This document shows positions 23,409-62,593 of a stretch of DNA of 64,000 bases, piece by piece. Positions within the stretch are counted from its first letter, which is position 1, and every line of letters starts with the position of its first letter. The translations under genes and the position numbers were made by a program. The notes under the pieces were generated by a model. It saw only the letters and a program-made list of their open reading frames with translations, had not been told where the DNA came from and did not search any database. The DNA lies in the IMG/VR virus record IMGVR_UViG_3300037042_006844, positions 124,001 to 188,000 of that record; one strand, written 5' to 3'.

Positions 23409-24685
23409 GTCAATTGACACACGACCCTAAAGGGTCGGTGCTTGCCAGAGAAGAACCTCTGACGATTGGTTGATTGACAGCAACCTGTCCATCGAGTGCG
23501 GAGCACGAGATGGAGTGTTCTTTGTCATATCTAAAAGTGATATTGTTCGCAGCATTTAGGTCTGCGTCCAATACGACTTTATCAAGTCCATAATACCTAC
23601 ATCCTTTACGGACTCCGTTATCAAGACCACGATGGTCTAATTGGGATGTCCAGTGCGGATTAACGATGACCACTTGTTTTCCAAGTGATGCTGCCTTGTA
23701 GGTCAATATGTTCCTGAGAAGGAAATATGGCATTTGTGAATTGCGATTATTAAATCTTCGTCCTTTGAACTTGGATTTAATCTTGGTCAAATCCTCAATC
23801 ACAATGGTATTTGCCTTTGTGGTGAGAAGATGATTTACAACATTGTGTATGTAGTTCTTTGAAAAATGGTGTTCACGTCTGCGGAGTTTGGTTTGCTTAA
23901 CTCTGGTAGAATGTGATTTGTGAGATTGGAGTTTTCTCTTGTTCCAACGTATCTTACGTTTGGTTCGGTTAAACTCATTGCCTTTGATGATAATGCCTTC
24001 ACTGGTAGAAGCAAGTCGTTTGAGTCCCAAATCAACTCCAATACATTTTTTGTTGTCTTGGAATGTTGTGGTATCGTCAAATACAATAGAGAGGAACACT
24101 CTATCGTCTCTTACAAAAAGAGAAGGGTCTTTGAGTTTGTATTTTGAAAATAATTCGTTGACCTTATTATACTTGAGAAGTTTGGCAGTGATACGACCAT
24201 TACAAGTTGTCAGTTTAATGGCGTCTTGACCAATCCAAGTATAGATGCGAGTGTCCAGTTGGATGTTTAGTCGGTTTGTCTCAACTGGTTCTGTGATTTT
24301 ATGGCAATTGGAACGAAGAGATTTGTATTTTGCAACCACGTCTTGTTCTGCCTTAATGACAAACTGACTTGGAAGCATTGGAAGTTGTTCTCGAACCATC
24401 TTATAACATCTTTGGTGAAGAGGCATAAGACCATTACAGGACTTCATTCCAAATCGGATTTTAGATATGATATTGAAAGCATCACGTTTCAACGATAGTG
24501 ATTTGATGAGAGATTGTTTATCCTCATCATTTTCAAAAATCAGTTGAACATTGTATGTTTTCATTATTACTGGATATACATATTGTGAAGAAACAGAAAA
24601 CAACAAACTATTTTGAGAAAGTGAGATATTTTCGTTGCTCCTCCCCTACCCTAAAGGGATAGGGGTTTCCGCAACGAGTGAGAAT
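23409..24685 (-). mobile_element. IS200/IS605-family tnpB-only element
   Basis: end hairpins gaccctaaagggtc and cccctaccctaaagggatagggg; lies between promoter 23375-23402 and RNA ligase ATG. Confidence 0.85.
23410..24564 (-). CDS. tnpB: TnpB RNA-guided nuclease lacking the CxxC Zn finger
   Basis: RuvC GVDLG, IEDL, DADLNAA. Confidence 0.9.
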   Translation of the reverse strand: MKTYNVQLIFENDEDKQSLIKSLSLKRDAFNIISKIRFGMKSCNGLMPLHQRCYKMVREQLPMLPSQFVIKAEQDVVAKYKSLRSNCHKITEPVETNRLNIQLDTRIYTWIGQDAIKLTTCNGRITAKLLKYNKVNELFSKYKLKDPSLFVRDDRVFLSIVFDDTTTFQDNKKCIGVDLGLKRLASTSEGIIIKGNEFNRTKRKIRWNKRKLQSHKSHSTRVKQTKLRRREHHFSKNYIHNVVNHLLTTKANTIVIEDLTKIKSKFKGRRFNNRNSQMPYFLLRNILTYKAASLGKQVVIVNPHWTSQLDHRGLDNGVRKGCRYYGLDKVVLDADLNAANNITFRYDKEHSISCSALDGQVAVNQPIVRGSSLASTDPLGSCVN

Positions 24686-31122: not shown

Positions 31123-31344
31123 ATGGCAAAGAAACTCGTAATCAAATGTGTGGTGTGTGACAAATCCGATAATTTTTCGGATTCCAAAGACGTTACCCAG
31201 GCAAGATGGAAAATTATTGGTTGGAATATCGGTCAAGACGAACCCATATGCACATGCAACAAATGTGATTATTTTGATCAACCAAAAAAGCAAGCAAAGT
31301 CGAGCGTTGACAAAACAAAAAAAGCTGCTAAGATAACACCATGA
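31123..31344 (+). CDS. small zinc-ribbon protein
   Basis: CVVC...CNKC. Confidence 0.55.
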   Translation: MAKKLVIKCVVCDKSDNFSDSKDVTQARWKIIGWNIGQDEPICTCNKCDYFDQPKKQAKSSVDKTKKAAKITP

Positions 31345-34503: not shown

Positions 34504-34579
34504 CATATTCAAACCCAAGTTTTGAAAAAAAGCGTTTGACTTCTTATCAAACGCTGCTAAGATGAGTTTATCGCTGAGA

Positions 34580-38713: not shown

Positions 38714-40111
38714 ATGAATAAAAACATCTGTTTAACTACTGACAGCTACAAGCTAAACCATTGGAATCAATACCCTCGTAACACCGAGATTGTGTATAGT
38801 TATTTCGAGTGTCGCAAAGGAGCAACCTTCGCCGAAACCCCGTTCTTCGGGCTTCAATACATTATTAAAAGCCACCTTGAGGGCGCAGTCGTGACCAGGG
38901 AGAATATTGAGAAGGCAGCTAGGCTTTGCAAATTCCATTTTGGCGACGAGCGTTACTTCAACCGTGAGGGCTGGGAATACATCCTCAATAATTGGGGAGG
39001 TAAACTTCCAGTCGTTATCAAGGCTGTTGAGGAGGGAACTGTGGTTCCGGTCAACAACGTGTTGATGACCATTGAGAATGTGGGCGGTGCCATGACGGCT
39101 TGGCTCACCAATTTCCTTGAGACGATTTTGTCCCAAGTATGGTATCCCACAACCGTTGCAGCTTTGAGCCGTGAGGTCAAAAAGAATATCAAAGAATATC
39201 TTGATTTAACCAGTGAGGGCGGACTGCTCAATTTCGGACTGCATGATTTTGGGTTCCGGGGGGCATCGTCTTGGGAATCTGCTGGTATTGGTGGTGCGGC
39301 TCATCTAATCAACTTCCTTGGCACCGATACTTTGGTCGCGATGGAGGTCGCCATGAACTATTACAATGCAAACCTCGAAGGATTAGCATACAGTGTGGCA
39401 GCAACCGAGCACAGTGTGATGACTGCTTTGGGCAAGGACGGTGAGGAAACGGTCGTCGAGAATCTGCTCAATGAATATCCCACGGGTATTCTTTCTGTGG
39501 TCTCCGATAGCTACGACATCTACAATTTTGTTAACAACATCGTTGGACGCAAATTTAAGGATTGGATTCTTGAGCGTGATGGTGTGTTCGTGGTTAGACC
39601 AGATTCCATTACTCCGAGCCATCCAACTCCTGAGCAGGAAATGGTTTGGATTATGTGGAGTCTTTGGGACAATTTTGGTGGCATTATAAACAGCAAGGGA
39701 TTTAATGTTATCAATCCCAAGGTTCGTGTTCTTTGGGGCGATGGAATCGATTTGGAAGGTATCAAAAAGATTCTGTGTGCTGTTGCCGATGCTGGATTTG
39801 CAACCGAAAATATCGCATGTTTCGGAATGGGTGGCGGACTCTTACAGAAAGTCAATCGTGATACACAGCGTTGTGCATTCAAATCGTCTGCACAGTATCG
39901 CAACGGTCAGTGGTTTGATATTTTCAAGAGTCCCAAGGATATTTCCAAGGCTTCCAAAAAGGGCAAGCTCAAGCTCACCAAGATTGACGGCAAGTTCGTT
40001 ACTGTTGGTGAAAACGATCCCGGTGAGGATTATTTGAAGGTTGTGTTTACGAATGGTGTGCTGGTCAAGGAAATTGACTTTGCAACCGTTCGCAAGAACG
40101 CTGCTCTATGA
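38714..40111 (+). CDS. nadV: nicotinamide phosphoribosyltransferase
   Basis: TDSYK, LHDFGFRG, ATEHS, SVVSDSYD, RPDS, GDGI, FGMGG.L. Confidence 0.95.
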   Translation: MNKNICLTTDSYKLNHWNQYPRNTEIVYSYFECRKGATFAETPFFGLQYIIKSHLEGAVVTRENIEKAARLCKFHFGDERYFNREGWEYILNNWGGKLPVVIKAVEEGTVVPVNNVLMTIENVGGAMTAWLTNFLETILSQVWYPTTVAALSREVKKNIKEYLDLTSEGGLLNFGLHDFGFRGASSWESAGIGGAAHLINFLGTDTLVAMEVAMNYYNANLEGLAYSVAATEHSVMTALGKDGEETVVENLLNEYPTGILSVVSDSYDIYNFVNNIVGRKFKDWILERDGVFVVRPDSITPSHPTPEQEMVWIMWSLWDNFGGIINSKGFNVINPKVRVLWGDGIDLEGIKKILCAVADAGFATENIACFGMGGGLLQKVNRDTQRCAFKSSAQYRNGQWFDIFKSPKDISKASKKGKLKLTKIDGKFVTVGENDPGEDYLKVVFTNGVLVKEIDFATVRKNAAL

Positions 40112-40155
40112 ACTACCCACCCGCTAAAGCAGGCGGGTTTTCTGCTCCCACAAAG
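40108..40155 (-). mobile_element. 48-bp internally deleted mini-IS (both ends of the 59406-60706 family fused)
   Basis: atgaactacccacc.gctaaagcagg.gggtt matches 59406; ttctgctccc.caaag matches 60691-60706. Confidence 0.85.
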
Positions 40156-40167
40156 ATAAAATTGTGA

Positions 40168-40213
40168 AAATGGTCGGAATTCCTCCCCTTAGGGGTTTCC
40201 TTCCTCCAAAACT
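40168..40213 (-). mobile_element. solo IS end remnant with shortened hairpin
   Basis: aatggtcggaattcctcc...ggtttccttcctccaaaa shared with 18933. Confidence 0.7.
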
Positions 40214-40266
40214 ATGAAATGGATTAATCCCCTTGACTTCTATAAAATCTGTGGTATACTTTAGAT

Positions 40267-42212: not shown

Positions 42213-42287
42213 GGGGTCTAAGCTTTAATGGTGAAGCAAGCGGCTTTTAACCGCTAGAAGACGGATCGTTACCGTCAGGCCCTACCA
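42213..42287 (+). tRNA. tRNA-Lys(TTT)
   Basis: cloverleaf, anticodon loop ct-ttt-aa, encoded CCA; atypical T-loop ATCGTTA. Confidence 0.85.
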
Positions 42288-42303
42288 AATTTACAGTTAA
42301 AAT

Positions 42304-42379
42304 GGGGTTATCGTCTAATGGCTAGGACGGGAGACTTTCAATCTCCAAATCGTGGGTTCAATTCCCCGTAGCCCTACCA
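42304..42379 (+). tRNA. tRNA-Glu(TTC)
   Basis: ggaga-ct-ttc-aa-tctcc, GTTCAATT, CCA. Confidence 0.9.
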
Positions 42380-42387
42380 TTTTCACT

Positions 42388-42610
42388 GTCAGGTCAATAA
42401 TGACAGACCGTTAGCAATAAGCGGTGTCAATGTGCAAAAAAATTCAAGTGGTATAGCACATCTGACGTTATAGATTCCACTTGATGGTGGAGGGGCGCGG
42501 AATAGCCCCCTAGACAAACAGATTGACGGATTGATATAATCGAAGGATATTATATCTAATGCAACAGATAAATCCGATATAATGGTTTGTCGAGAGTTTG
42601 ACATAACTCT
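42388..42610 (+). ncRNA. unknown multi-stem pseudoknotted RNA
   Basis: at least 8 helices including 8-bp loop pairing tcaagtgg/ccacttga. Confidence 0.6.
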
Positions 42611-42623
42611 ACAACAACATATG

Positions 42624-42699
42624 TCTGGTTGCGGGGATGAGCCAATGGTGTCTCGGTTATCCGATTGGATCGAGATTCAATAACCCTACAATCGGACCA
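42624..42699 (+). ncRNA. tRNA-sized CCA-ended non-cloverleaf RNA
   Basis: ctggttg/caatcgg stem + ACCA; no T-arm. Confidence 0.5.
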
Positions 42700-42709
42700 A
42701 TTTTATAAT

Positions 42710-42786
42710 TGCGGAATAGAGTTCTGGTGAACTCCGGTGTCTCATAAGCACTCGCTAGAAAAGTTCGATTCTTTTTTCCGCTACCA
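42710..42786 (+). tRNA. tRNA-Met(CAT), partly initiator-like
   Basis: ct-cat-aa loop; 1:72 mismatch; lacks 3 G-C anticodon-stem pairs. Confidence 0.8.
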
Positions 42787-42791
42787 ATTTC

Positions 42792-42885
42792 GGTTCTGTA
42801 GTTTAACTGGTAAAACCCCATACTTATAATATGGTAATCGCTAGATGTGCGTGACTTCTCGGTTCGAATCCGAGCAGAACCACCA
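42792..42885 (+). tRNA. tRNA-Ile(TAT) with long variable arm
   Basis: ccata-ct-tat-aa-tatgg, ~23-nt V region, GGTTCGAATCC, ACCA. Confidence 0.8.
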
Positions 42886-42949
42886 AATTTATGACGAACG
42901 TGTCATAAAAAAACAAAGTTACATTGAATTAATACTAATATAATAGAAT

Positions 42950-43276
42950 ATGAAAAAGATACTTCTAACAGTTGCAACCCTCTCTCTTCTTTTGACCGCT
43001 AGTGCGGTTGATACCAAGGAACTCTACGATTCACAATGCTCCAAGTGTCATGGAACAAATGGCAATGGTGTGACCAAGATGGGTCAAAAGCTCAATGCGA
43101 AGGATTGGACCGATGTCAAGATTCAAGCCGCAATGACCGAGACCAACATGGTCAAGGCAATTAAGGTGGGCATTAAAGATGCCGAGGACAAGACTCGCAT
43201 GAAGGCATATTCAGATATGACTGATGCCGATGTGACGAATTTGGTTACGTATATCAAAACCTTCAAAAAGCAATAA
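42950..43276 (+). CDS. class I c-type cytochrome, exported
   Basis: signal peptide, CSKCH, distal RMKAY Met. Confidence 0.9.
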   Translation: MKKILLTVATLSLLLTASAVDTKELYDSQCSKCHGTNGNGVTKMGQKLNAKDWTDVKIQAAMTETNMVKAIKVGIKDAEDKTRMKAYSDMTDADVTNLVTYIKTFKKQ

Positions 43277-43294
43277 CATCGTATATAACATCGT

Positions 43295-43624
43295 ATGAAG
43301 AAATCATTGATGCTCGGGGTTTTGATTCTCAGCGGAATGTTGTGTCAAGCACAAAACGCTGGAACCAACGAATTGTATAACAGCAAGTGCAGCAAGTGCC
43401 ATGCAAAAGATGGCTCGGGCAACACACTGATGGGCAAAAAGTATAGTGCGAAAAACTATACAGATGCAGCCGTCCAAAACAAGCTTACTGATGAAGCTTT
43501 TGATAAGTCCCTCAAAGAGGGTTACACCGATGCCGAAGGCAAGAAAGTAATGCAGGCTTTTCCAGAGCTTACGGCACTGGAGCGCAAGGAACTCATCAAA
43601 ACGATGCGGTCCTTCAAGAAATAA
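43295..43624 (+). CDS. class I c-type cytochrome, exported (paralog)
   Basis: signal peptide, CSKCH, distal VMQAF Met. Confidence 0.9.
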   Translation: MKKSLMLGVLILSGMLCQAQNAGTNELYNSKCSKCHAKDGSGNTLMGKKYSAKNYTDAAVQNKLTDEAFDKSLKEGYTDAEGKKVMQAFPELTALERKELIKTMRSFKK

Positions 43625-43643
43625 GATTGACATATCAATTTAT

Positions 43644-43716
43644 GCGGAATTAGTGTCATGAGGAGCACGGCTATCGACCAGATAGCAAGGTTGGTGCAAG
43701 TCCAAATTCCGCTCCA
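43644..43716 (+). tRNA. atypical tRNA-Gly-like (ACC)
   Basis: gcggaat/attccgc + T + CCA; loop cg-acc-ag; T-loop TGCAAGT. Confidence 0.65.
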
Positions 43717-43724
43717 CTTTTTCA

Positions 43725-43800
43725 GGGCTCTTAGCTTAATTGGTTAAGCAGCAAACTCATAATTTGTTGAGTGGGGGTTCGAGTCCCTCAGGGCCCACCA
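43725..43800 (+). tRNA. tRNA(CAT), probably Ile2
   Basis: gggctct acceptor, ct-cat-aa, GTTCGAGT, ACCA. Confidence 0.85.
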
Positions 43801-56514: not shown

Positions 56515-59157
56515 TCAATCTTCATCCCAAATTTTGATTTTGCTCCAGCTAGAGTCCTTGAAATAAATATCGGGTTCACCAAAATGATCCAGTGCTGCTT
56601 GCACAACATTACCACTGCCCCAATAGTTTCCAGTTATGAATCCTTCTGGACGAATTTTTGGCAGCCATTGGGCAAGCAAACGCCAGTTATACTGATAGCT
56701 TTTGTATTCATTGAGATAAATCAGATCGATACTCCCTGGTTCAAACCGATCAGCAGCTTCCATTGCATCAACATCTTCAATGACTTTGACGCACGGATAT
56801 GATGCTGTGCGCAGATTAAAATTGTGCCGCACATCATCCAACGCAATGCTTTTTGGCCAGCTATCATCAATTTTATCAAATTGATCTACGACCCACAGTT
56901 CTTCTGGTTGTAGATACTTTGCGAGCAACGATGTGGCTTCGCCTTGATAACAGTTGATTTCGACGATGCGTTTGATTTTGAAATTGCGCTCGGTTTGATT
57001 TTTGTTGACGTAATTACAGAAATCGATGAACCCTGTGAGATATATTTTGGCTGGGTTATCCAACATGCTCAAAAATTTGATATCACTATCGGTGGCAAAA
57101 AACTGCTCTTGAACACCTATGCCAATGCGGCTGTTTTGAATCATGCGCAATTTGTTTTTATTGCTTTGCATTCGCTTTTTGTTGATCCGCTTGACCCAAC
57201 TACCATCTTCAAAATGGGCATCGATATTGCTCACCGTATCGGTGATAGTTTTGACCACACTGTCGCTACCCCATTCTCCGCCACCAATCACGCCGCCATC
57301 GCGTAATTTGGGCAGATACAAATCCAACAACTGCTTGATCATGCTGGCTGAGTTATTGGTTCCGATGTAAATGAAATCCAAACTGCCGTCCGCAAACTGT
57401 TTTGCCGCACCCACGATATCTGTGTCGTAGTGTCTAATACATGGATACTGCTTGGAACGCAGAAAAAAGTTGTGCTTTACATCATCCCATTTATGTTTGA
57501 AAATAGTTTCGTCGTCGTTAACAACGTCACCGCTGATGCGGCTTTCAAACGACTCGACTGCATGTAAACTCGTTGGATTGAATTTATGCGCAAAAATAGT
57601 GGTCAATTCTCCTTGGAAACTATTGAGTTCCAATATATTTTTGACTGGGGTTTTGCTGCTAACATAGTCGCACAAATCCAAGGCACCTTGAAGCGGGGCA
57701 GGCACAAAATATGGTGTGTCGAGAATGAAATCAATGCTTTGCTGGCTTACATAAAATTGGTTGCTCACGCCTTGATCTGTTGCGGGAACTCCCAGACGAA
57801 ACTTTTTAACTGACGTAATCAGTGGTATTGTTGCCATATGTTTTGTATAATAATCTGTATTATTAGATTCTGTTGGTTCTGTTAATTTTGTTGATCTTAT
57901 TCTGGCTGAGTGAGTGATCCAAGTTGAATCTGAAAAGAAAACATCGGGTTCTCCAATAGTCTCTAAACATGCATTGACCACCTCACCATTACCCCAACCA
58001 ATCCCGGCAATAATGCCATTCTTTTTAAGTTTTGGTAATGCCCGTGCGATAAGCGATTTCAAATAATCTTTATTGCTGTGCTCGTTGATGTAAACCAAAT
58101 CAATACTATCATCCGCAAACAGGTCTGTCAACACAGTTTCGGGACTAAATTTGAGGGGCTTGACGCACGGATACGGTTTGATTCTGAATTTGAAATTCGA
58201 TTCGACCTTTTGCATGTCCAAAGCCGACTGGGAAATTTTCGGCTGTTTGTCGAACTTTTCAACGGCATACAAACTGGTTGGAGCTAGATATTTTGCAAAC
58301 AGTTCAGTGGTCTCACCTTGATAGCAATTGATCTCCACAACGGTGTCCAGTTTTTGACCTTTTAGATGGTCAAAAAAACTTAAAATTGCTTTGGTTTGAT
58401 CGGTCTGGTCGTTTTCCAACAACCAAGCAATATCATCGTCGCAAGCAGTAAACGACTTGGATATGCTTACTCCCAATCGGGTATTTGGAAGAACATACAG
58501 ACCCGCATTGCGTTTGATACGAGGCGTTACTTTTACCAACCAACTACTATCATCAAAATGTATATCGACATCGCCAAACGCTTCAATGATGGCTTTGGTC
58601 ACTCCACCCTTGCCGAGATCGTGACCGCCCATGTAACCACCCAATTTAATTTTTGGTAGATATGTGTTGATGTCTCGTATCACGCCTTCATAAGTATGAT
58701 CTCCGTCAATATACACAAAATCCAAACTGTTGTCCGCAAACATATCAACAGTGTCATAGCTGAATTTTTTGATATGTCTGACACATTCAAACGGCTCGGT
58801 TCGTAATTTGAAATTGTAGCTGACATCGTCAAAATTTGCAAATGAGCTATCATCGTTCGCATCATATCCATTCACAAACGGATCGATGGCATACAAATCT
58901 TTTGGATTGAACTGCATTGCGAATAAACTGGTGCTTTCACCTTGATAGCTTCCGATCTCCACCATTCGTTCAACGGTAGTATCATTTTTTACATGATCAA
59001 TACATGCAAGAAGTCCACGCAGCCAGTTATTTTGAAATAACTCGTCGTGATTCAAGATATACTCAATGTTTTCCTTGGTGGCAAAAAATTGCCTACCACC
59101 GAGACCGGTGCCCAATCGCATACAAGGCAATGTTGTGCGTAACAATGAGTTATCCAT
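56515..59157 (-). CDS. four-domain Methyltransf_24-like protein
   Basis: four repeats of E(I/L)xxxQGE...D(F/L)(V/I)Y...LPK...G...F.D.SW. Confidence 0.85.
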   Translation of the reverse strand: MDNSLLRTTLPCMRLGTGLGGRQFFATKENIEYILNHDELFQNNWLRGLLACIDHVKNDTTVERMVEIGSYQGESTSLFAMQFNPKDLYAIDPFVNGYDANDDSSFANFDDVSYNFKLRTEPFECVRHIKKFSYDTVDMFADNSLDFVYIDGDHTYEGVIRDINTYLPKIKLGGYMGGHDLGKGGVTKAIIEAFGDVDIHFDDSSWLVKVTPRIKRNAGLYVLPNTRLGVSISKSFTACDDDIAWLLENDQTDQTKAILSFFDHLKGQKLDTVVEINCYQGETTELFAKYLAPTSLYAVEKFDKQPKISQSALDMQKVESNFKFRIKPYPCVKPLKFSPETVLTDLFADDSIDLVYINEHSNKDYLKSLIARALPKLKKNGIIAGIGWGNGEVVNACLETIGEPDVFFSDSTWITHSARIRSTKLTEPTESNNTDYYTKHMATIPLITSVKKFRLGVPATDQGVSNQFYVSQQSIDFILDTPYFVPAPLQGALDLCDYVSSKTPVKNILELNSFQGELTTIFAHKFNPTSLHAVESFESRISGDVVNDDETIFKHKWDDVKHNFFLRSKQYPCIRHYDTDIVGAAKQFADGSLDFIYIGTNNSASMIKQLLDLYLPKLRDGGVIGGGEWGSDSVVKTITDTVSNIDAHFEDGSWVKRINKKRMQSNKNKLRMIQNSRIGIGVQEQFFATDSDIKFLSMLDNPAKIYLTGFIDFCNYVNKNQTERNFKIKRIVEINCYQGEATSLLAKYLQPEELWVVDQFDKIDDSWPKSIALDDVRHNFNLRTASYPCVKVIEDVDAMEAADRFEPGSIDLIYLNEYKSYQYNWRLLAQWLPKIRPEGFITGNYWGSGNVVQAALDHFGEPDIYFKDSSWSKIKIWDED

Positions 59158-59168
59158 AACGTATTTTT

Positions 59169-59381
59169 TTAGTCTTTCAAGTATTGCAAATTTTTGGTGA
59201 AACACTGAAAGCATAATTGCCCAGCACCTTCCACATAATGGTTGCGAAACTCAATGTGCAATGCTTTTGGAACACTCGTTTTTTTATTGCATAGAATGCA
59301 ACGTTCAAACTGAGAGTCTTTTTCAGACTCGACGGGAACATTGCCAGCAATGATGGCTTTCTGTGGAACATTATTATTCAT
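59169..59381 (-). CDS. small zinc-finger phage protein
   Basis: CILC...R..YVEGAGQLC..C. Confidence 0.7.
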   Translation of the reverse strand: MNNNVPQKAIIAGNVPVESEKDSQFERCILCNKKTSVPKALHIEFRNHYVEGAGQLCFQCFTKNLQYLKD

Positions 59382-59405
59382 GTATTTGACCTATAACTAT
59401 TTGCT

Positions 59406-60706
59406 ATGAACTACCCACCTGCTAAAGCAGGTGGGTTTCCACCGCAATAGTTATGAGTTTCTATCGGGTAGTTCCTACCCGTATTAAACGTTGTCTTTGG
59501 AAATGAGAAGTCCAAGATATTCTTGGCAGCATTCACATCTCTATCGTGTTTCTCATTACAATCTGGGCAAGTCCATTCTCTATCATTTAATGTAAGAGAA
59601 TGATTAACATATCCACAATGAGAACACGTCTTACTGGATGGTTCAAATCTACCTATTTTTAGGAAGTTCTTACCATACCAGTCGCTTTTATATTGGAGCA
59701 TATTTACAAATTTTCCCCAAGCATAATCTCCTATGAGTTTATTAGTTGGTGAATAGTTGTTCTTCTGCATCCCCCGAATGGTTAAATCCTCAATACAGAT
59801 ATTACCAATTTGGTTATCATTGGTTAGTTTGTATGAGAGTTTATCCAAGAAATCTTTGCGTTGTCTTGTTATTTTAGAATGGAGTTTGGTTATCTGCTCT
59901 TGCTTGGAGATATGAGCAGTAGAACCTTTAGTGAGTTGCTCCAAATCCTGTTGGTGTTTAGTAAGTTTATCAGCAGATTGTTTCAATACCTTCGGGTTCT
60001 CAATCTTTGTTCCATCATTCAGAGTAAGAAATGTTTTTACTCCAAAATCTATTCCTATTGCTTTATCCTTTTTTGGTGTTGGTTTCTTTGATAGTTCTTT
60101 TTCAACCTCTACAAGAATGGAAACATAGTATCGTTTATCTCTGTCTTGGGATACGATTGCTTGTTTAATCGTTCCTTCTGCTTGTCGGTCAAAGATACAT
60201 TTAATGCCTCCACGAAACTTTGGAATGACTAATCGCTTTCCATCATAGTTCAACTTAATGTTGTTATTAGTCATTGGGACAACGAACGATTTACGAGCAT
60301 ACTTCTTCGACTTAAACTTTGGAAATCCAGCATTGGAACGAAAGAAGGAAGTATATGCTCTATCCAAGTTGAGGATGGATTGCTGTAGCGATTGAGAACC
60401 TATCTCACTCAACCATTCATTTGTCTTTTTCAACTTTGGAAGTTCAGTTGCCATATCCTGCCAGTTCAATGTTTTCTTGGTTTCTTTGTAATGCTTAATC
60501 TTTACTTCAAGGAAATGGTTGTATATCCATCGGCAGTGTCCAAAATGCTTGGACAAAAGAACCTCTTGTTCCTTGGTAGGATATATTCTGTATTTGTAAG
60601 CAACGTTATACATTCTACAACATACATATCATTCACTTTCTAAAAACGATTAATTATTTTTCAATGGGTCGCATTCATCCCATATGGGGTTTCTGCTCCC
60701 TCAAAG
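59406..60706 (-). mobile_element. IS200/IS605-family tnpB-only element
   Basis: right-end hairpin acccacctgctaaagcaggtgggt; shortened left-end hairpin at 60665-60706. Confidence 0.88.
59411..60613 (-). CDS. tnpB: TnpB RNA-guided nuclease
   Basis: AYKYRIYP HTH, GIDFG, IEDL, CSHC/CPDC, DRDVNAA. Confidence 0.95.
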   Translation of the reverse strand: MYNVAYKYRIYPTKEQEVLLSKHFGHCRWIYNHFLEVKIKHYKETKKTLNWQDMATELPKLKKTNEWLSEIGSQSLQQSILNLDRAYTSFFRSNAGFPKFKSKKYARKSFVVPMTNNNIKLNYDGKRLVIPKFRGGIKCIFDRQAEGTIKQAIVSQDRDKRYYVSILVEVEKELSKKPTPKKDKAIGIDFGVKTFLTLNDGTKIENPKVLKQSADKLTKHQQDLEQLTKGSTAHISKQEQITKLHSKITRQRKDFLDKLSYKLTNDNQIGNICIEDLTIRGMQKNNYSPTNKLIGDYAWGKFVNMLQYKSDWYGKNFLKIGRFEPSSKTCSHCGYVNHSLTLNDREWTCPDCNEKHDRDVNAAKNILDFSFPKTTFNTGRNYPIETHNYCGGNPPALAGG

Positions 60707-60719
60707 ATAAATATAGTGG

Positions 60720-61058
60720 TTACTTCCAAACTACTTGCAACACCACTATTAGAACACTAAGTCCAATCAATGTCAAGGTTTTTGGAGTAAGCTGCTCGTT
60801 AAAATAAAACGTGGTTAGTATAGTAAACATTAACATTCCAATACTGAACGTAAATATCCTATTAGGCCAGATTTTGCCGTCGAAATGCTCGCTGATCAGT
60901 TTAACGCTGTAAATTGATAATAATGTATTGGGCATCGACAATAACAACATTGGATACTGGTATCGTTTGAATGCTTCGTGCAAAAACTGCCCATATAGTT
61001 GGTGCCAGCCAACTACATATACGATTACCAATAAACATAGTCCGTAAAACAGTTTCAT
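60720..61058 (-). CDS. four-TM membrane protein (DMT/SMR-like topology)
   Basis: four hydrophobic segments. Confidence 0.6.
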   Translation of the reverse strand: MKLFYGLCLLVIVYVVGWHQLYGQFLHEAFKRYQYPMLLLSMPNTLLSIYSVKLISEHFDGKIWPNRIFTFSIGMLMFTILTTFYFNEQLTPKTLTLIGLSVLIVVLQVVWK

Positions 61059-61315
61059 CGGTTGGAGTTCATTGTTACAATGAACCCGGGGGTATTGAGT
61101 CCAACCCAAGCATCTTGTTGGTTATAATGGTGGAATTCCATAGCCTCATTCTCGGTCATGCCATCGTCCATAAGCTTTTGCAGCACTTTGTCGGTATCAT
61201 ATACAACATATTCGCCGCTACCACTACGGGATCCAATACCAGCGATACAGTCGTCGTATCCATCCATTGTGATGAGTTCGTTCGTTTCAATATACTCCTG
61301 TAAACTTGTTTTCAT
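61055..61315 (-). CDS. conserved hypothetical phage protein
   Basis: DGYDDCIAG...VVYD...DGM...EA.E...YN...AWVG..TP. Confidence 0.7.
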   Translation of the reverse strand: MKTSLQEYIETNELITMDGYDDCIAGIGSRSGSGEYVVYDTDKVLQKLMDDGMTENEAMEFHHYNQQDAWVGLNTPGFIVTMNSNR

Positions 61316-61860
61316 TTGGGGCTTAGATATCCGTGCTTAATGTAGTGAATAATGTTTTCTCGTCCAACCGGGTCCATGCTGTGAACCAAAAACGATGGAT
61401 GTGCTACGCCCTCTTTTCTGCATTCTTCGCACAAAAATCTGGCGCAGTCATAACCAGTTTTTTCGTCAGTGATCGGACCATCATAATGATGATCATTCTC
61501 CTCCAGAATGTGGTCGTAACAAACGAACTCAGGAATTCCTTTGCTGCGAATAACATCGCAAAATGCATCGTAGTTTCTCACAATTGTCCATTCAGTTGGA
61601 ATGGTTGGGAGTGTAACCCAATAAACCCAATCAGGCATTCGGATATCGTCAAGAAAAAGATAGTATGGTTGCATAGAGTTTTCTTCCAGATGTAGAGTAT
61701 ACATCACTTCTCCATCGTTGTAAAGACAATCGTTGGTTCTCTCGACCTTTTTGACCACGATCCCATTTCTGCCATAATGGGCAATAATTTCGTCCAACTG
61801 TTCGGCAGTTTTGACTTTATGTAGCTGAATTGAATTGTTGTTGATAATATCTCGCATCAT
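61312..61860 (-). CDS. cyclic-phosphate-processing receiver-domain protein with N-terminal extension
   Basis: LFLDDIR, VRNY, YDH.L, TGYDCA..L, HSM.P.GR.NI. Confidence 0.75.
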   Translation of the reverse strand: MMRDIINNNSIQLHKVKTAEQLDEIIAHYGRNGIVVKKVERTNDCLYNDGEVMYTLHLEENSMQPYYLFLDDIRMPDWVYWVTLPTIPTEWTIVRNYDAFCDVIRSKGIPEFVCYDHILEENDHHYDGPITDEKTGYDCARFLCEECRKEGVAHPSFLVHSMDPVGRENIIHYIKHGYLSPK

Positions 61861-61897
61861 TTAGATACTTATATGTAGTTGAGTTGCGTTATAAATA

Positions 61898-62593
61898 ATG
61901 AAAATCGGAATAATAACAATGGCAGCGGGAAGAGTTTACAGAGAATATGCTCAACGACTTTTGGATTCTCTGCATTTATTTCTACCAATTCACGAACGAA
62001 CAGTTATCATTCTTGGCGACGATACCACCAATCATTCCAGTCTGGCAATACGAACGCTGTATATTCCACCGTTGCCAAAACCACTGAACACTTTACTGCG
62101 ATTTCATTATATAAAACAATGCGATCTGTCGGAGTTTGATTTGATTTATTATATAGATGCCGACTGTGAAGTGGTCGTTCCAATAGGAGACGAAATTTTT
62201 CCAGATAAACAGGGGCAATTGTGTGTGGTAAAACACCCTTGGGCAGATAAATGTGGTTACGGTTTGGGACCGGATGATTTTTACGAAAGAAATCCTCTAT
62301 CGCAAGCCGCAACGTCCGATCCTCGTAACGGTATTTACTACCAAGGGTGTTTTTTTGGCGGGTATCGTGATGATTTTCTGACTATGGTAGAATTGTTGGA
62401 TAAAAATGTCAAGCTGGATTTGAACAACCGAATCATTGCCAAATGGCATGACGAGTCCCACATGAACAAATATTTCATCGACAATCCACCAAAAGAATTG
62501 TCGCCATCATATGCTTATCCTGGGTGCGATTCGTATCGTGGTATATTTCCAGCCTACATCAAACACTGGAACAATGCTTGGGACGATAAATAG
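61898..62593 (+). CDS. glycosyltransferase family 6
   Basis: YIDAD, YERNP.S.A, YYQG.FFGG, WHDESHMNKYF. Confidence 0.88.
   Translation: MKIGIITMAAGRVYREYAQRLLDSLHLFLPIHERTVIILGDDTTNHSSLAIRTLYIPPLPKPLNTLLRFHYIKQCDLSEFDLIYYIDADCEVVVPIGDEIFPDKQGQLCVVKHPWADKCGYGLGPDDFYERNPLSQAATSDPRNGIYYQGCFFGGYRDDFLTMVELLDKNVKLDLNNRIIAKWHDESHMNKYFIDNPPKELSPSYAYPGCDSYRGIFPAYIKHWNNAWDDK

What the first reader, a model, noticed from the sequence alone, without database searches (positions are those of the whole stretch)
59381..60716. Second tnpB family targets TTTAT, the core of the putative phage late promoter
Seen: both this element and the mini-copy at 40108 sit in ct|ataaa. The empty site on the minus strand reads ctaTATTTAT|agcaaat...ATG(59381), i.e. 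the motif found before putative late genes. Both full-length tnpB genes also carry an internal TATGTAT 8-12 nt before their ATG. Inference: these IS elements are adapted to the phage, using its late promoter as both target and expression signal.
Basis: partly seen in the sequence, partly recalled or inferred. Interest (0 to 1): 0.72.

Follow-up and report, generated by a model that had tools for sequence, protein, structure and literature searches.

The report
TnpB insertion element riding phage promoters
A 1.3-kb RNA-guided-nuclease (TnpB) insertion element in an uncultivated 303-kb T4-like phage inserts after TTTAT, which is also the core of the phage's own non-early promoter-like motif, and it carries a copy of that motif in front of its gene; the target itself is inherited from cellular relatives, not newly evolved.

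Summary
Window 59406-60706 (minus strand) is a 1,301-bp IS200/IS605-type element that carries tnpB only. It has TTTAT on its 5' side, hairpins near both ends and an intact TnpB. The genome holds four miniature derivatives, all next to TTTAT. Contigs of near-identical phages in two other metagenomes lack the element and read ...ATATTTAT|AGCAAAT..., a natural empty site.

The motif [A/C]TAT[T/G]TAT[A/T] is real. It occurs 121 times in the genome, 76 of them within 60 nt upstream of a same-strand start codon, most often 4-6 nt before the ATG. It precedes virion genes. It almost never coincides with the sigma70-like promoters found before early-type genes. Five of the six tnpB genes in the genome carry it 4-11 nt before their start.

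TTTAT also flanks cellular relatives and is the tested TAM of ISGst2 TnpB2, so the target was inherited. Seven of 13 phage-borne insertions lie in TATTTAT. That is only marginally more than expected for surviving insertions at non-coding TTTAT sites (P about 0.04-0.09).

The internal motif is absent from the nearest cellular relative and plausibly reflects adaptation to phage transcription. "Late" timing is inferred, not shown.

The parts
59406..60706 (-). Complete tnpB-only IS200/IS605-type element (1,301 bp).
   Evidence: Boundaries come from aligning the full copy with four mini-copies and three relatives. They also come from the joint 59407->60707 in contigs that lack the element, and from contigs with unrelated flanks that end at 59405/59406.
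60707..60711 (-). TTTAT target / transposon-adjacent motif (TAM), kept on the 5' side of the left end. The extended TATTTAT is 60707-60713.
   Evidence: The same pentamer flanks all 5 copies in the genome and 8 of 8 scorable relatives on phage contigs.
60614..60706 (-). Left end (93 nt). It begins CTTTGAGGGAGCAGAAA and has a short hairpin (CCCATATGGG, about 60679-60688).
   Evidence: Conserved with L016, L018, L125 and mini4, where the hairpin is longer.
60622..60628 (-). Internal TATGTAT, 8 nt before the tnpB ATG. Proposed phage-type promoter for a leaderless or short-leader tnpB mRNA.
   Evidence: Conserved in L016, L017/L123, L018 and L125; L129 has TATTTAT instead. Absent at the same place in the nearest cellular relative, L022.
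59411..60613 (-). tnpB, 400 aa, with an intact RuvC triad (D189, E275, D359) and zinc-finger cysteines.
   Evidence: Pfam HTH_OrfB_IS605, OrfB_IS605 and Cas12f1-like_TNB. Full-length match to ISDra2 TnpB structures 8bf8/8exa/8h1j, E = 2.6e-66. Invariant residues in alignment A1.
59406..59575 (-). Right end with the presumed omega-RNA scaffold. It overlaps the 3' end of tnpB. The terminal hairpin is at 59414-59435 and the element ends ...TAGTTCAT.
   Evidence: Conserved with mini4, L016-L018 and L035. Consensus fold has 39 pairs, 12 of them with compensatory changes. No Rfam family matched.
59386..59405 (-). Flank 3' of the right end (AGCAAATAGTTATAGGTCAA). Presumed guide segment of the omega-RNA. 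It equals the sequence after TTTAT in the natural empty site.
   Evidence: for the empty site. The guide role is inferred from how IS605 TnpB is known to work.
59169..59381 (-). Downstream 70-aa ORF in the same orientation. In genomes without the element its ATG lies 24 nt after the TATTTAT, and a TAGTTAT variant lies 12 nt before the ATG.
   Evidence: No family match.
40108..40155 (-). 48-bp miniature derivative: left-end start, one hairpin and right-end tip. TTTAT is at 40156-40160. It is inserted in the stop codon of the NAMPT gene (CTA|TAA becomes CTA TGA).
   Evidence: NAMPT assignment.
24576..24582 (-). TATGTAT 11 nt before the ATG of the other (family-1) tnpB in the window (CDS 23410-24564).

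Best explanation
Window 59406-60706 is a non-autonomous IS200/IS605-family element of the tnpB-only (IS1341-like) type. It lives in an uncultivated 303-kb T4-like phage from lakes and sediments.

Like its relatives, it inserts immediately 3' of TTTAT without duplicating the target. It needs a TnpA supplied from elsewhere. Its TnpB, guided by an RNA made from the right end plus the adjacent flank, would cut element-free copies of the same site (TTTAT + AGCAAATAG...). Recombination with an element-bearing genome would then restore the element.

TTTAT is an inherited specificity. It happens to be the core of the phage's abundant [A/C]TAT[T/G]TAT[A/T] motif. That motif is most likely a compact non-early (middle or late) promoter placed so that transcripts begin at or next to the ATG. 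Non-coding DNA is scarce in this genome and 28% of its TTTAT sites are part of this motif, so surviving insertions often sit in such promoters, in the same orientation as the downstream gene.

The left end also carries its own copy of the motif 8 nt before the tnpB ATG. So tnpB and the guide RNA are probably expressed with the phage's non-early genes, when many recombining genome copies are present. This resembles T4 homing-endonuclease genes that have their own late promoters.

Shown: the anatomy, the target, the presence/absence polymorphism, the motif statistics, and the inheritance of TTTAT.
Inferred: promoter function, timing, nuclease activity, homing.
For: Element and protein:
- Pfam domains, full-length match to ISDra2 TnpB, and a conserved catalytic triad and zinc finger.
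- Ends and target: five copies in the genome, all after TTTAT and all ending GTTCAT/ATTCAT. Relatives at 81-94% identity on other viral contigs have the same ends.
- Polymorphism: contigs without the element in two independent metagenomes, and right ends joined to unrelated flanks in two more.
- No Y1 transposase anywhere in the 303-kb contig.

Inherited TAM:
- TTTAT lies 15-17 nt before the left-end hairpin in L022, L027, L034 and L035.
- ISGst2 TnpB2 has TAM TTTAT by ChIP-seq, library and mutation assays. Solo-tnpB elements of Sulfolobus also have TTTAT.

Motif:
- Enrichment and spacing.
- It stands before the adaptor, baseplate hub, tail fibre, tail spike, sheath and major-capsid operon; the portal gene has the variant TACTTAT.
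- In four clear cases a terminator-like hairpin with a T-run sits directly before the motif and the ATG.
- A separate sigma70-like class sits before ligase, rIIA, rIIB and clusters of small ORFs, with its -10 element ending 6-9 nt before the ATG. The two classes overlap in 2 genes against 14 expected, P = 5e-6.
- Shine-Dalgarno-like sequences are rare.
- Precedent for leaderless phage promoters.

tnpB and the motif:
- 5 of 6 tnpB genes have the strict motif within 12 nt of their start, against 15% of all genes, P = 4e-4.
- Precedent in T4 homing endonucleases.
Against: - There are no transcript data, so promoter function, the transcription start and 'late' timing all rest on sequence statistics and gene content.
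- No gp55-, gp45-, sigma70- or RNA-polymerase-like gene was detected that could read the motif. The contig is estimated 89% complete and such proteins diverge quickly.
- Some motif-bearing genes are not structural, for example a deoxyribonucleotidase-like gene and a metallophosphatase.
- tRNA genes show no motif, so the test that could have separated transcription from translation was uninformative.
- The 7 of 13 rate of TATTTAT among phage-borne insertions is somewhat above the non-coding null (P = 0.04). A real extended preference is therefore not excluded.
- The element-free variant differs by an extra 26 nt, so the insertion history at this site is not a simple one-step event.
Confidence: 0.62

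Rival explanations
1. One reading: this lineage of elements has evolved to aim at the phage's late promoter. Its effective target would be the longer TATTTAT(A), so that each new copy lands behind a working promoter.
For: - 7 of 13 scorable phage-borne insertions have TA at positions -7/-6, against 0 of 4 cellular relatives.
- This gives P = 3e-4 against all TTTAT sites and P = 0.04 against non-coding TTTAT sites.
- mini2 and L129 sit exactly between a motif and an ATG 6-8 nt away.
- In four long phage contexts tnpB has the same orientation as its neighbours.
Against: - Six of 13 insertions are in other TTTAT contexts: the NAMPT stop codon, a terminator T-run, a tRNA spacer, CACTTTAT and AGTTTAT.
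- TTTAT alone is the flank in cellular relatives and the tested TAM of ISGst2.
- L016's TATTTAT is antisense to both neighbouring genes.
- P rises to 0.09 if L106 and L108 are counted as one site.
- The null was taken from this genome only.
- Selection after insertion would give the same pattern.
Confidence: 0.2
2. The motif is not a promoter. It would be an RNA-level signal for translation start or processing in a host with few Shine-Dalgarno sequences. The copy inside the element would then only tune translation of tnpB.
For: - Very tight spacing to ATG (4-6 nt), absence of Shine-Dalgarno-like sequences, and an AU-rich composition.
- No motif before tRNA genes.
- No cognate sigma factor or polymerase found.
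Against: - About a third of gene-proximal motifs lie 13-95 nt from the ATG, including those before the sheath gene and the major-capsid operon.
- Terminator-like hairpins directly precede several motifs, leaving no room for another promoter.
- Sigma70-like promoters sit at the equivalent distance from ATG in other genes, and the two classes exclude each other.
- Six of eight positions match the T4 late promoter TATAAATA (that consensus is from my own knowledge).
Confidence: 0.12
3. The tnpB genes are domesticated phage genes, for example RNA-guided weapons against competing phages or regulators, and no longer parts of mobile elements.
For: - Six tnpB genes but no transposase in the genome.
- Some relatives have lost the left end and are fixed at one site in many samples (L113-L122, L017/L123).
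- All are expressed from phage-type signals.
Against: - This copy has both ends intact and is present or absent among near-identical phages.
- Mini-copies and unrelated flanks show mobility of the family.
- The guide position matches the element's own empty site, as expected for selfish homing.
- The catalytic triad is intact, so it is not a nuclease-dead regulator.
Confidence: 0.06

Closest known systems
IS200/IS605-family elements with TnpB and omega-RNA: ISDra2 (Deinococcus), ISGst2 (Geobacillus stearothermophilus) and the tnpB-only IS1341-type
   Same: - Domain architecture, and a full-length match to ISDra2 TnpB.
- Hairpins near both ends, and insertion 3' of a pentanucleotide without target duplication.
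- The right end overlaps the 3' end of tnpB.
- The TAM TTTAT is identical to that of ISGst2 TnpB2.
   Different: - No tnpA here or anywhere in the 303-kb genome.
- It resides in a lytic-type T4-like phage.
- The left end carries the phage's own start-proximal motif instead of a host-type promoter. The nearest cellular relative, L022, has TAAAATA at that place.
Palindrome-associated miniature derivatives of IS200/IS605 (PATE/MITE-like)
   Same: Short copies made only of end sequences and flanked by the same target: 48 bp three times and 240 bp once.
   Different: - The 48-bp form has a single hairpin joined at the shared AAACCCA of the left and right ends. It could be a deletion scar of full copies rather than a mobile unit.
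- The mini-copies resemble the L016/mini4 type more than the resident full copy.
Homing-endonuclease genes of T4 (I-TevI/II/III, seg, mob)
   Same: - Selfish nuclease genes inside T4-like genomes that are fitted into the phage's timed transcription.
- Middle or late promoters stand immediately upstream of the nuclease ORF.
- Insertions displace or carry promoters of neighbouring genes.
   Different: - Those recognise DNA through protein, belong to the GIY-YIG or HNH families, and have no transposon ends.
- Here the nuclease is RNA-guided and the element has IS605-type ends.
T4-type late promoter TATAAATA (read by gp55/gp33/gp45) and leaderless -10-only promoters of Thermus phages
   Same: - A single short AT-rich element with no -35 element, standing before virion genes.
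- Six of eight positions equal TATAAATA (own knowledge).
- In Thermus phages the -10 element lies 6 bp before a start that coincides with the start codon.
   Different: - The consensus is [A/C]TAT[T/G]TAT[A/T], with T or G where T4 has A.
- No gp55 or gp45 homologue was detected.
- Function is untested.

Membership tests
TnpB (RNA-guided nuclease of IS200/IS605/IS607 elements) | OrfB_IS605 (RuvC-like) domain plus zinc-ribbon (TNB) domain | tested here: met
   Pfam PF01385 (E = 9e-24), PF07282 (E = 9e-25) and PF12323 (E = 2e-19), all above their cut-offs. Match to 8bf8/8exa/8h1j over residues 3-367, E = 2.6e-66.
TnpB (RNA-guided nuclease of IS200/IS605/IS607 elements) | Intact RuvC catalytic D-E-D and CxxC...CxxC zinc finger | tested here: met
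   D189, E275, D359, C330, C333, C349 and C352 are invariant in alignment A1. Assigning them to the catalytic motifs rests on their positions close to ISDra2 D191/E278/D361 (own knowledge).
TnpB (RNA-guided nuclease of IS200/IS605/IS607 elements) | Omega-RNA encoded at the 3' end of tnpB and the right end, with its guide taken from the flank | tested here: inconclusive
   The conserved, structured 170-nt right end is also kept in the tnpB-less mini4. No Rfam model matched. No RNA data.
TnpB (RNA-guided nuclease of IS200/IS605/IS607 elements) | TAM-dependent, RNA-guided DNA cleavage | not testable with these tools
   Needs a plasmid-interference or in vitro cleavage assay.
IS200/IS605 insertion sequence (single-strand 'peel and paste') | Hairpins near both ends, no terminal inverted repeats, no target duplication, insertion 3' of a fixed 4-5-nt target | tested here: met
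   Hairpins in both ends. TTTAT stands only on the 5' side in 5 of 5 copies in the genome and in 8 relatives. A natural empty site shows no duplication.
IS200/IS605 insertion sequence (single-strand 'peel and paste') | Y1 (HUH) transposase TnpA in the element or available from elsewhere | tested here: not met
   No PF01797 match in the whole 303-kb contig. The element is therefore non-autonomous (tnpB-only); a host-encoded TnpA cannot be checked. One serine recombinase lies 4.3 kb away but is not next to any tnpB.
T4-type late promoter | Short -10-like element with no -35 element, standing before late (virion) genes | tested here: met
   Hardly any overlap with the sigma70-like class.
T4-type late promoter | Recognition by a gp55-like sigma factor with gp33 and a sliding clamp; consensus TATAAATA | tested here: not met
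   T4 gp55 and gp45, and PHROGs 234 and 12791, gave no match. The consensus differs at two positions. The motif is therefore not filed as a T4 late promoter, only as working like one.
T4-type late promoter | Transcription starts a few nt downstream, late in infection | not testable with these tools
   Only DNA runs hold this phage. The single read-laying run was used on DNA contigs.

The most novel reading that the evidence does not exclude
A diversified clade of IS605 tnpB-only elements (more than 120 protein clusters at 61-93% identity) may have become a specialist resident of freshwater T4-like giant phages. All nine examined contexts are phage or phage-like contigs. In this reading the clade has replaced its native promoter with the phage's leaderless non-early promoter. 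It also lands preferentially in that same promoter motif. It would then act as an RNA-guided homing endonuclease between co-infecting phage genomes late in infection, an RNA-guided counterpart of the T4 seg/mob/I-Tev genes.
Probability: 0.3. Interest if true: 0.65.

Novelty: new variant of a known kind. Interest (0 to 1): 0.5.

Why it matters
TnpB elements are the ancestors of Cas12 nucleases and are known as RNA-guided 'homing' devices in bacterial chromosomes. How they behave inside virulent phages is little described. In those phages many genome copies recombine late in infection, which are the conditions homing needs.

This case offers:
- a natural presence/absence polymorphism with exact junctions;
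- a family of derivatives within one genome;
- a clear hint that the element's expression signal has been swapped for the phage's own.

It also defines, from sequence alone, a two-class and apparently leaderless promoter system in an uncultivated T4-like giant phage. The non-early motif is a variant of the T4 late promoter, and no recognisable gp55 is present.

If the timing and homing are confirmed, this would extend the logic of T4 homing endonucleases to RNA-guided nucleases. It would also show how a short transposon target can, by chance overlap with a promoter core, steer an element into places where it is both tolerated and transcribed.

Tried and rejected
- Near-identity search of the element in 50,697 deposited phage genomes gave no match. 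By protein, 426 phage records carry relatives, all below 60% identity.
- The neighbouring 899-aa methyltransferase gene found no related viral locus, so an orthologous empty site could not be obtained that way. The read/contig approach succeeded instead.
- The region of this genome that corresponds to L016's insertion site was located by protein similarity, but its intergenic DNA is too diverged to read an empty site.
- Searches for the factor that might read the motif all found nothing: multisubunit RNA polymerase domains, sigma70 region 2, T4 gp55 and gp45 as proteins, and the PHROG families for late sigma factors. PHROG scans of genes near the Mre11-like gene also gave no sigma factor.
- Rfam has no model that matches the right end.
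- The test 'motif before tRNA genes would indicate transcription rather than translation' was uninformative. None of the 37 tRNA genes has the motif within 60 nt.
- The idea that the right-end tip (TAGTTCAT) rebuilds a motif for the downstream gene was considered and dropped. The extra C breaks the pattern.
- Phage-like multisubunit polymerase promoters of the phiKZ type were considered and dropped. The capsid protein is of the T4 gp23 type and no such polymerase was found.
- No complex prediction or structure prediction was run, because no claim here depends on one.
Full report
**Setting**

The window is bases 124001-188000 of a single 303,564-bp IMG/VR virus contig. The contig is linear, estimated 89% complete, and has 41% G+C. 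It encodes:
- a T4 gp23-type major capsid protein;
- a tail sheath, a portal, an adaptor, baseplate and fibre proteins;
- rIIA/rIIB, DNA ligase, NAMPT, PRPP synthetase and thymidylate synthase;
- 37 tRNAs and a tmRNA.

It is therefore an uncultivated, distant T4-like giant phage. DNA runs from lake water and sediments hold it.

**The element**

The ORF at 59411-60613 (minus strand, 400 aa) has the three Pfam domains of IS605-type TnpB. It aligns over its full length with the solved ISDra2 TnpB, E = 2.6e-66. The RuvC residues D189/E275/D359 and the four zinc-finger cysteines are invariant among relatives.

On the tnpB-sense strand the element reads TTTAT|CTTTGAGGGAGCAGAAA-hairpin-...tnpB...-CCCACCTGCTTTAGCAGGTGGG-TAGTTCAT|AGCAAATAG. 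A whole-genome BLAST found four miniature derivatives, all in the same orientation and all directly after TTTAT:
- three of 48 bp (genome 164108-164155, which is window 40108-40155; 241740-241787; 113341-113388);
- one of 240 bp (genome 78093-78332), which keeps the structured 3' region.

This puts the full element at window 59406-60706 and the target at 60707-60711.

The 170-nt right end is conserved and structured across six sequences: 39 predicted pairs, 12 with compensatory changes. This fits an omega-RNA scaffold, but no Rfam model matched. No Y1 transposase is encoded anywhere in the contig, so the element is non-autonomous.

**A natural empty site**

I laid Logan contigs of four other metagenomes on window 57000-62000. 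A 15-kb contig in X2 (lake water) and a contig in X6 (sediment) are 95-99% identical in the flanks. Both skip 59407->60707, with 24 other letters in between.

Read on the sense strand, the element-free form is CCACTATATTTAT-TCCAACTTCACAACAAACATATTTAT|AGCAAATAGTTATAGGTCAAATAC-ATG. The free site has two ATATTTAT copies 26 nt apart; the element-bearing genome has only one.

In X7 and X10, contigs carrying the same right end stop matching at 59405/59406 and continue into unrelated sequence. These are other insertion sites of the family, and they confirm the right boundary. The element is thus polymorphic in nature.

**The motif**

I made a rough gene call of 358 genes. TATTTATA occurs in 45 upstream regions against 2.8 expected. 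CTATTTAT, ATATTTAT and ATATGTAT are similarly enriched. TATTTAT peaks 4-7 nt before the ATG, whereas its reverse complement shows no such peak.

The consensus is [A/C]TAT[T/G]TAT[A/T]. Of its 121 genomic occurrences, 76 lie within 60 nt upstream of a same-strand start. Many of the rest precede small ORFs that my gene call missed.

The motif stands before the adaptor, baseplate hub, tail fibre, tail spike, a tail protein, the sheath gene (52 nt upstream) and the first gene of the major-capsid operon (95 nt upstream). The portal gene has the variant TACTTAT.

Several features argue for a promoter rather than a translation signal:
- In four clear cases a terminator-like hairpin with a T-run directly precedes the motif and the ATG.
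- Shine-Dalgarno-like 4-mers are rare in all genes (13%) and absent from genes with a nearby motif.
- A second class, TTGAC-N17-19-TAnnnT, precedes 62 genes, including ligase, rIIA, rIIB and many small ORFs at 100-160 kb. It usually begins 34-38 nt before the ATG, so its -10 element ends 6-9 nt before the start codon.
- The two classes share only 2 genes against 14 expected (P = 5e-6).

My reading is that there are host-type early promoters and a phage-specific non-early promoter, and that both give leaderless or near-leaderless mRNAs. Thermus phages are a published precedent for that layout. The motif matches six of the eight positions of the T4 late promoter TATAAATA (own knowledge). However, no gp55, gp45, sigma70-like or RNA-polymerase gene was detected. 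'Late' and 'promoter' remain inferences.

**Does the element target the promoter?**

TTTAT lies inside TATTTAT, so overlap is built in. In this genome 3 of 5 copies lie in TATTTAT. Only 11.8% of all 1,459 TTTAT sites have that context (P = 0.014), but 27.9% of the 326 non-coding ones do (P = 0.14).

I added relatives with a readable left boundary on other phage contigs: L016, L108, L112 and L129 in TATTTAT, and L018, L106, L125 and L130 not. That gives 7 of 13, with P = 0.043 against the non-coding null. It becomes 0.087 if L106 and L108, which share their downstream flank, are counted once.

Sites outside the motif include the NAMPT stop codon, a terminator T-run and a tRNA spacer. Two sites (mini2 and L129) lie exactly between a motif and an ATG 6-8 nt away.

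Cellular relatives have TTTAT at the equivalent distance before the left-end hairpin, none of them in TATTTAT. These are an Ectothiorhodospiraceae MAG at 59% identity, and Methanosarcinales, Methanogenium and Patescibacteria at 43-45%. TTTAT is also the experimentally established TAM of ISGst2 TnpB2 and of solo-tnpB elements in Sulfolobus.

The target is therefore inherited. The frequent promoter location is explained mostly, perhaps wholly, by where TTTAT sites can tolerate an insertion.

**The internal motif**

TATGTAT lies 8 nt before this tnpB's ATG. The genome has six tnpB genes in two very different families. Five have the strict motif 4-11 nt before their start, and the sixth has TACTTAT at 32 nt. 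Only 15% of all genes have the strict motif that close (P = 4e-4), although copies within one family are not independent.

Phage-borne relatives keep TATGTAT or TATTTAT, or the looser variants TATATAT, TACTTAT and TAGTTAT, at that place. The nearest cellular relative has TAAAATA instead. This is the best evidence for adaptation to the phage.

After insertion into a motif the junction reads TATTTAT|C. C is rare at that position in natural motifs (4%), so the captured promoter may be weakened. The internal copy may be the main driver of tnpB expression.

**Mechanism proposed**

Shown: an IS605-type tnpB-only element with a TTTAT target, mobile in natural populations, that carries the phage's start-proximal motif.

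Inferred:
- A TnpA supplied from elsewhere moves the element.
- tnpB and the omega-RNA are transcribed with the non-early genes.
- The TnpB-RNA complex cuts element-free genomes at TTTAT + AGCAAATAG...
- Recombination among the many replicating genomes then copies the element back. This is the homing role shown for ISGst elements (abstract).

The concept parallels the T4 intron and free-standing endonuclease genes, which have their own middle or late promoters and can displace or embed the promoters of their neighbours.

**Comparison and novelty**

The element is a member of a known kind and its TAM is known. TnpB genes are also common in deposited phage genomes. What appears to be new:
- the replacement of the element's expression signal by the phage's own motif in two unrelated tnpB families;
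- the built-in overlap of target and promoter core;
- a large clade at 60% identity or more seen so far only on phage or phage-like contigs.

Full-text searches found no description of this.

I rate it a new variant of a known kind, of moderate interest.

Noticed in passing
whole genome; in the window e.g. 31307-31340 (before the ligase gene), 34536-34579 (before rIIA), 40233-40266: A sigma70-like promoter class (TTGAC-N17-19-TAnnnT, often with TG before the -10 element) stands before 62 genes. It usually begins 34-38 nt before the ATG, so even early-type mRNAs appear leaderless. Shine-Dalgarno-like sequences are rare. This may point to a host in which leaderless translation is common.
   Followed up: partly
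window 40106-40111 and 40108-40155: The 48-bp mini-copy is inserted inside the stop codon of the NAMPT gene. The original CTA|TAA became CTA TGA, with the new stop supplied by the element's tip, so the protein is unchanged.
   Followed up: yes
window about 40161-40215 (minus strand): A fragment or miniature of the other tnpB family's left end (TTTTGGAGGAAGGAAACCCC-hairpin-GGAATTCCGACCAT) directly abuts the family-2 mini-copy. Two different miniature elements therefore sit side by side after NAMPT.
   Followed up: partly
window 23410-24564 (minus); genome 237510-238670, 267162-268322, 270718-271857; fragment at genome 145039-145311: Family-1 tnpB (no HTH domain, weak Pfam scores) has four full copies at 39-58% identity plus a fragment. 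The left end begins about TTTTGGAGGAAGG after a flank like TTTCATA, and the right end finishes ...GTTGAC. Its target may be TTCAT-like, which is the TAM reported for ISGst5 IscB.
   Followed up: partly
genome 78093-78332 (L004:18093-18332), outside the window: The 240-bp mini-copy keeps the structured right-end region but no tnpB. It lies 3 nt upstream of tRNA-Leu(CAA), so its presumed guide would be the 5' end of the tRNA gene.
   Followed up: partly
genome 257873-259012 (minus), outside the window: A second tnpB of the same broad family (35% identity) has a flank ending TTTAC rather than TTTAT. Its right end finishes ...ATTCAC, and TATGTAT lies 4 nt before its GTG start.
   Followed up: partly
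genome 188931-189521 (minus), 0.9 kb beyond the window's end: A 196-aa serine recombinase has its catalytic domain after a roughly 50-aa N-terminal part, which is the IS607-TnpA-like order. It is not adjacent to any tnpB.
   Followed up: no
window 59382-59405 and 60707-60720, compared with the element-free contigs of runs X2 and X6: Element-free variants carry a 26-nt unit that repeats ATATTTAT; the element-bearing genome has one copy only. The unit may have been lost after insertion, or the insertion may have occurred in a one-copy variant.
   Followed up: partly
window 42213-43797; genome 72191-110554 and 166213-167800: The genome has 37 tRNA genes and a tmRNA (tag AKENVVSYDFSYENVAAVAA). tRNA spacers are rich in CCA-TTTTT/ATTTAT, which offers many TTTAT sites.
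   Followed up: no
window 56515-59214 (minus); 61312-61860 (minus); 61898-62593 (plus): Neighbouring genes are an 899-aa protein with three Methyltransf_24 stretches, a protein with a cyclic-phosphate-processing receiver (cREC_REC) domain, and a family-6 glycosyltransferase.
   Followed up: no
L113-L122 and L017/L123/L124 (related viral contigs): Some close relatives of this tnpB have lost the left end (no hairpin, no TTTAT boundary) but keep the right end and a TATATAT or TATGTAT before the start. They are found at one fixed site in many samples, so they may be immobilised copies.
   Followed up: partly
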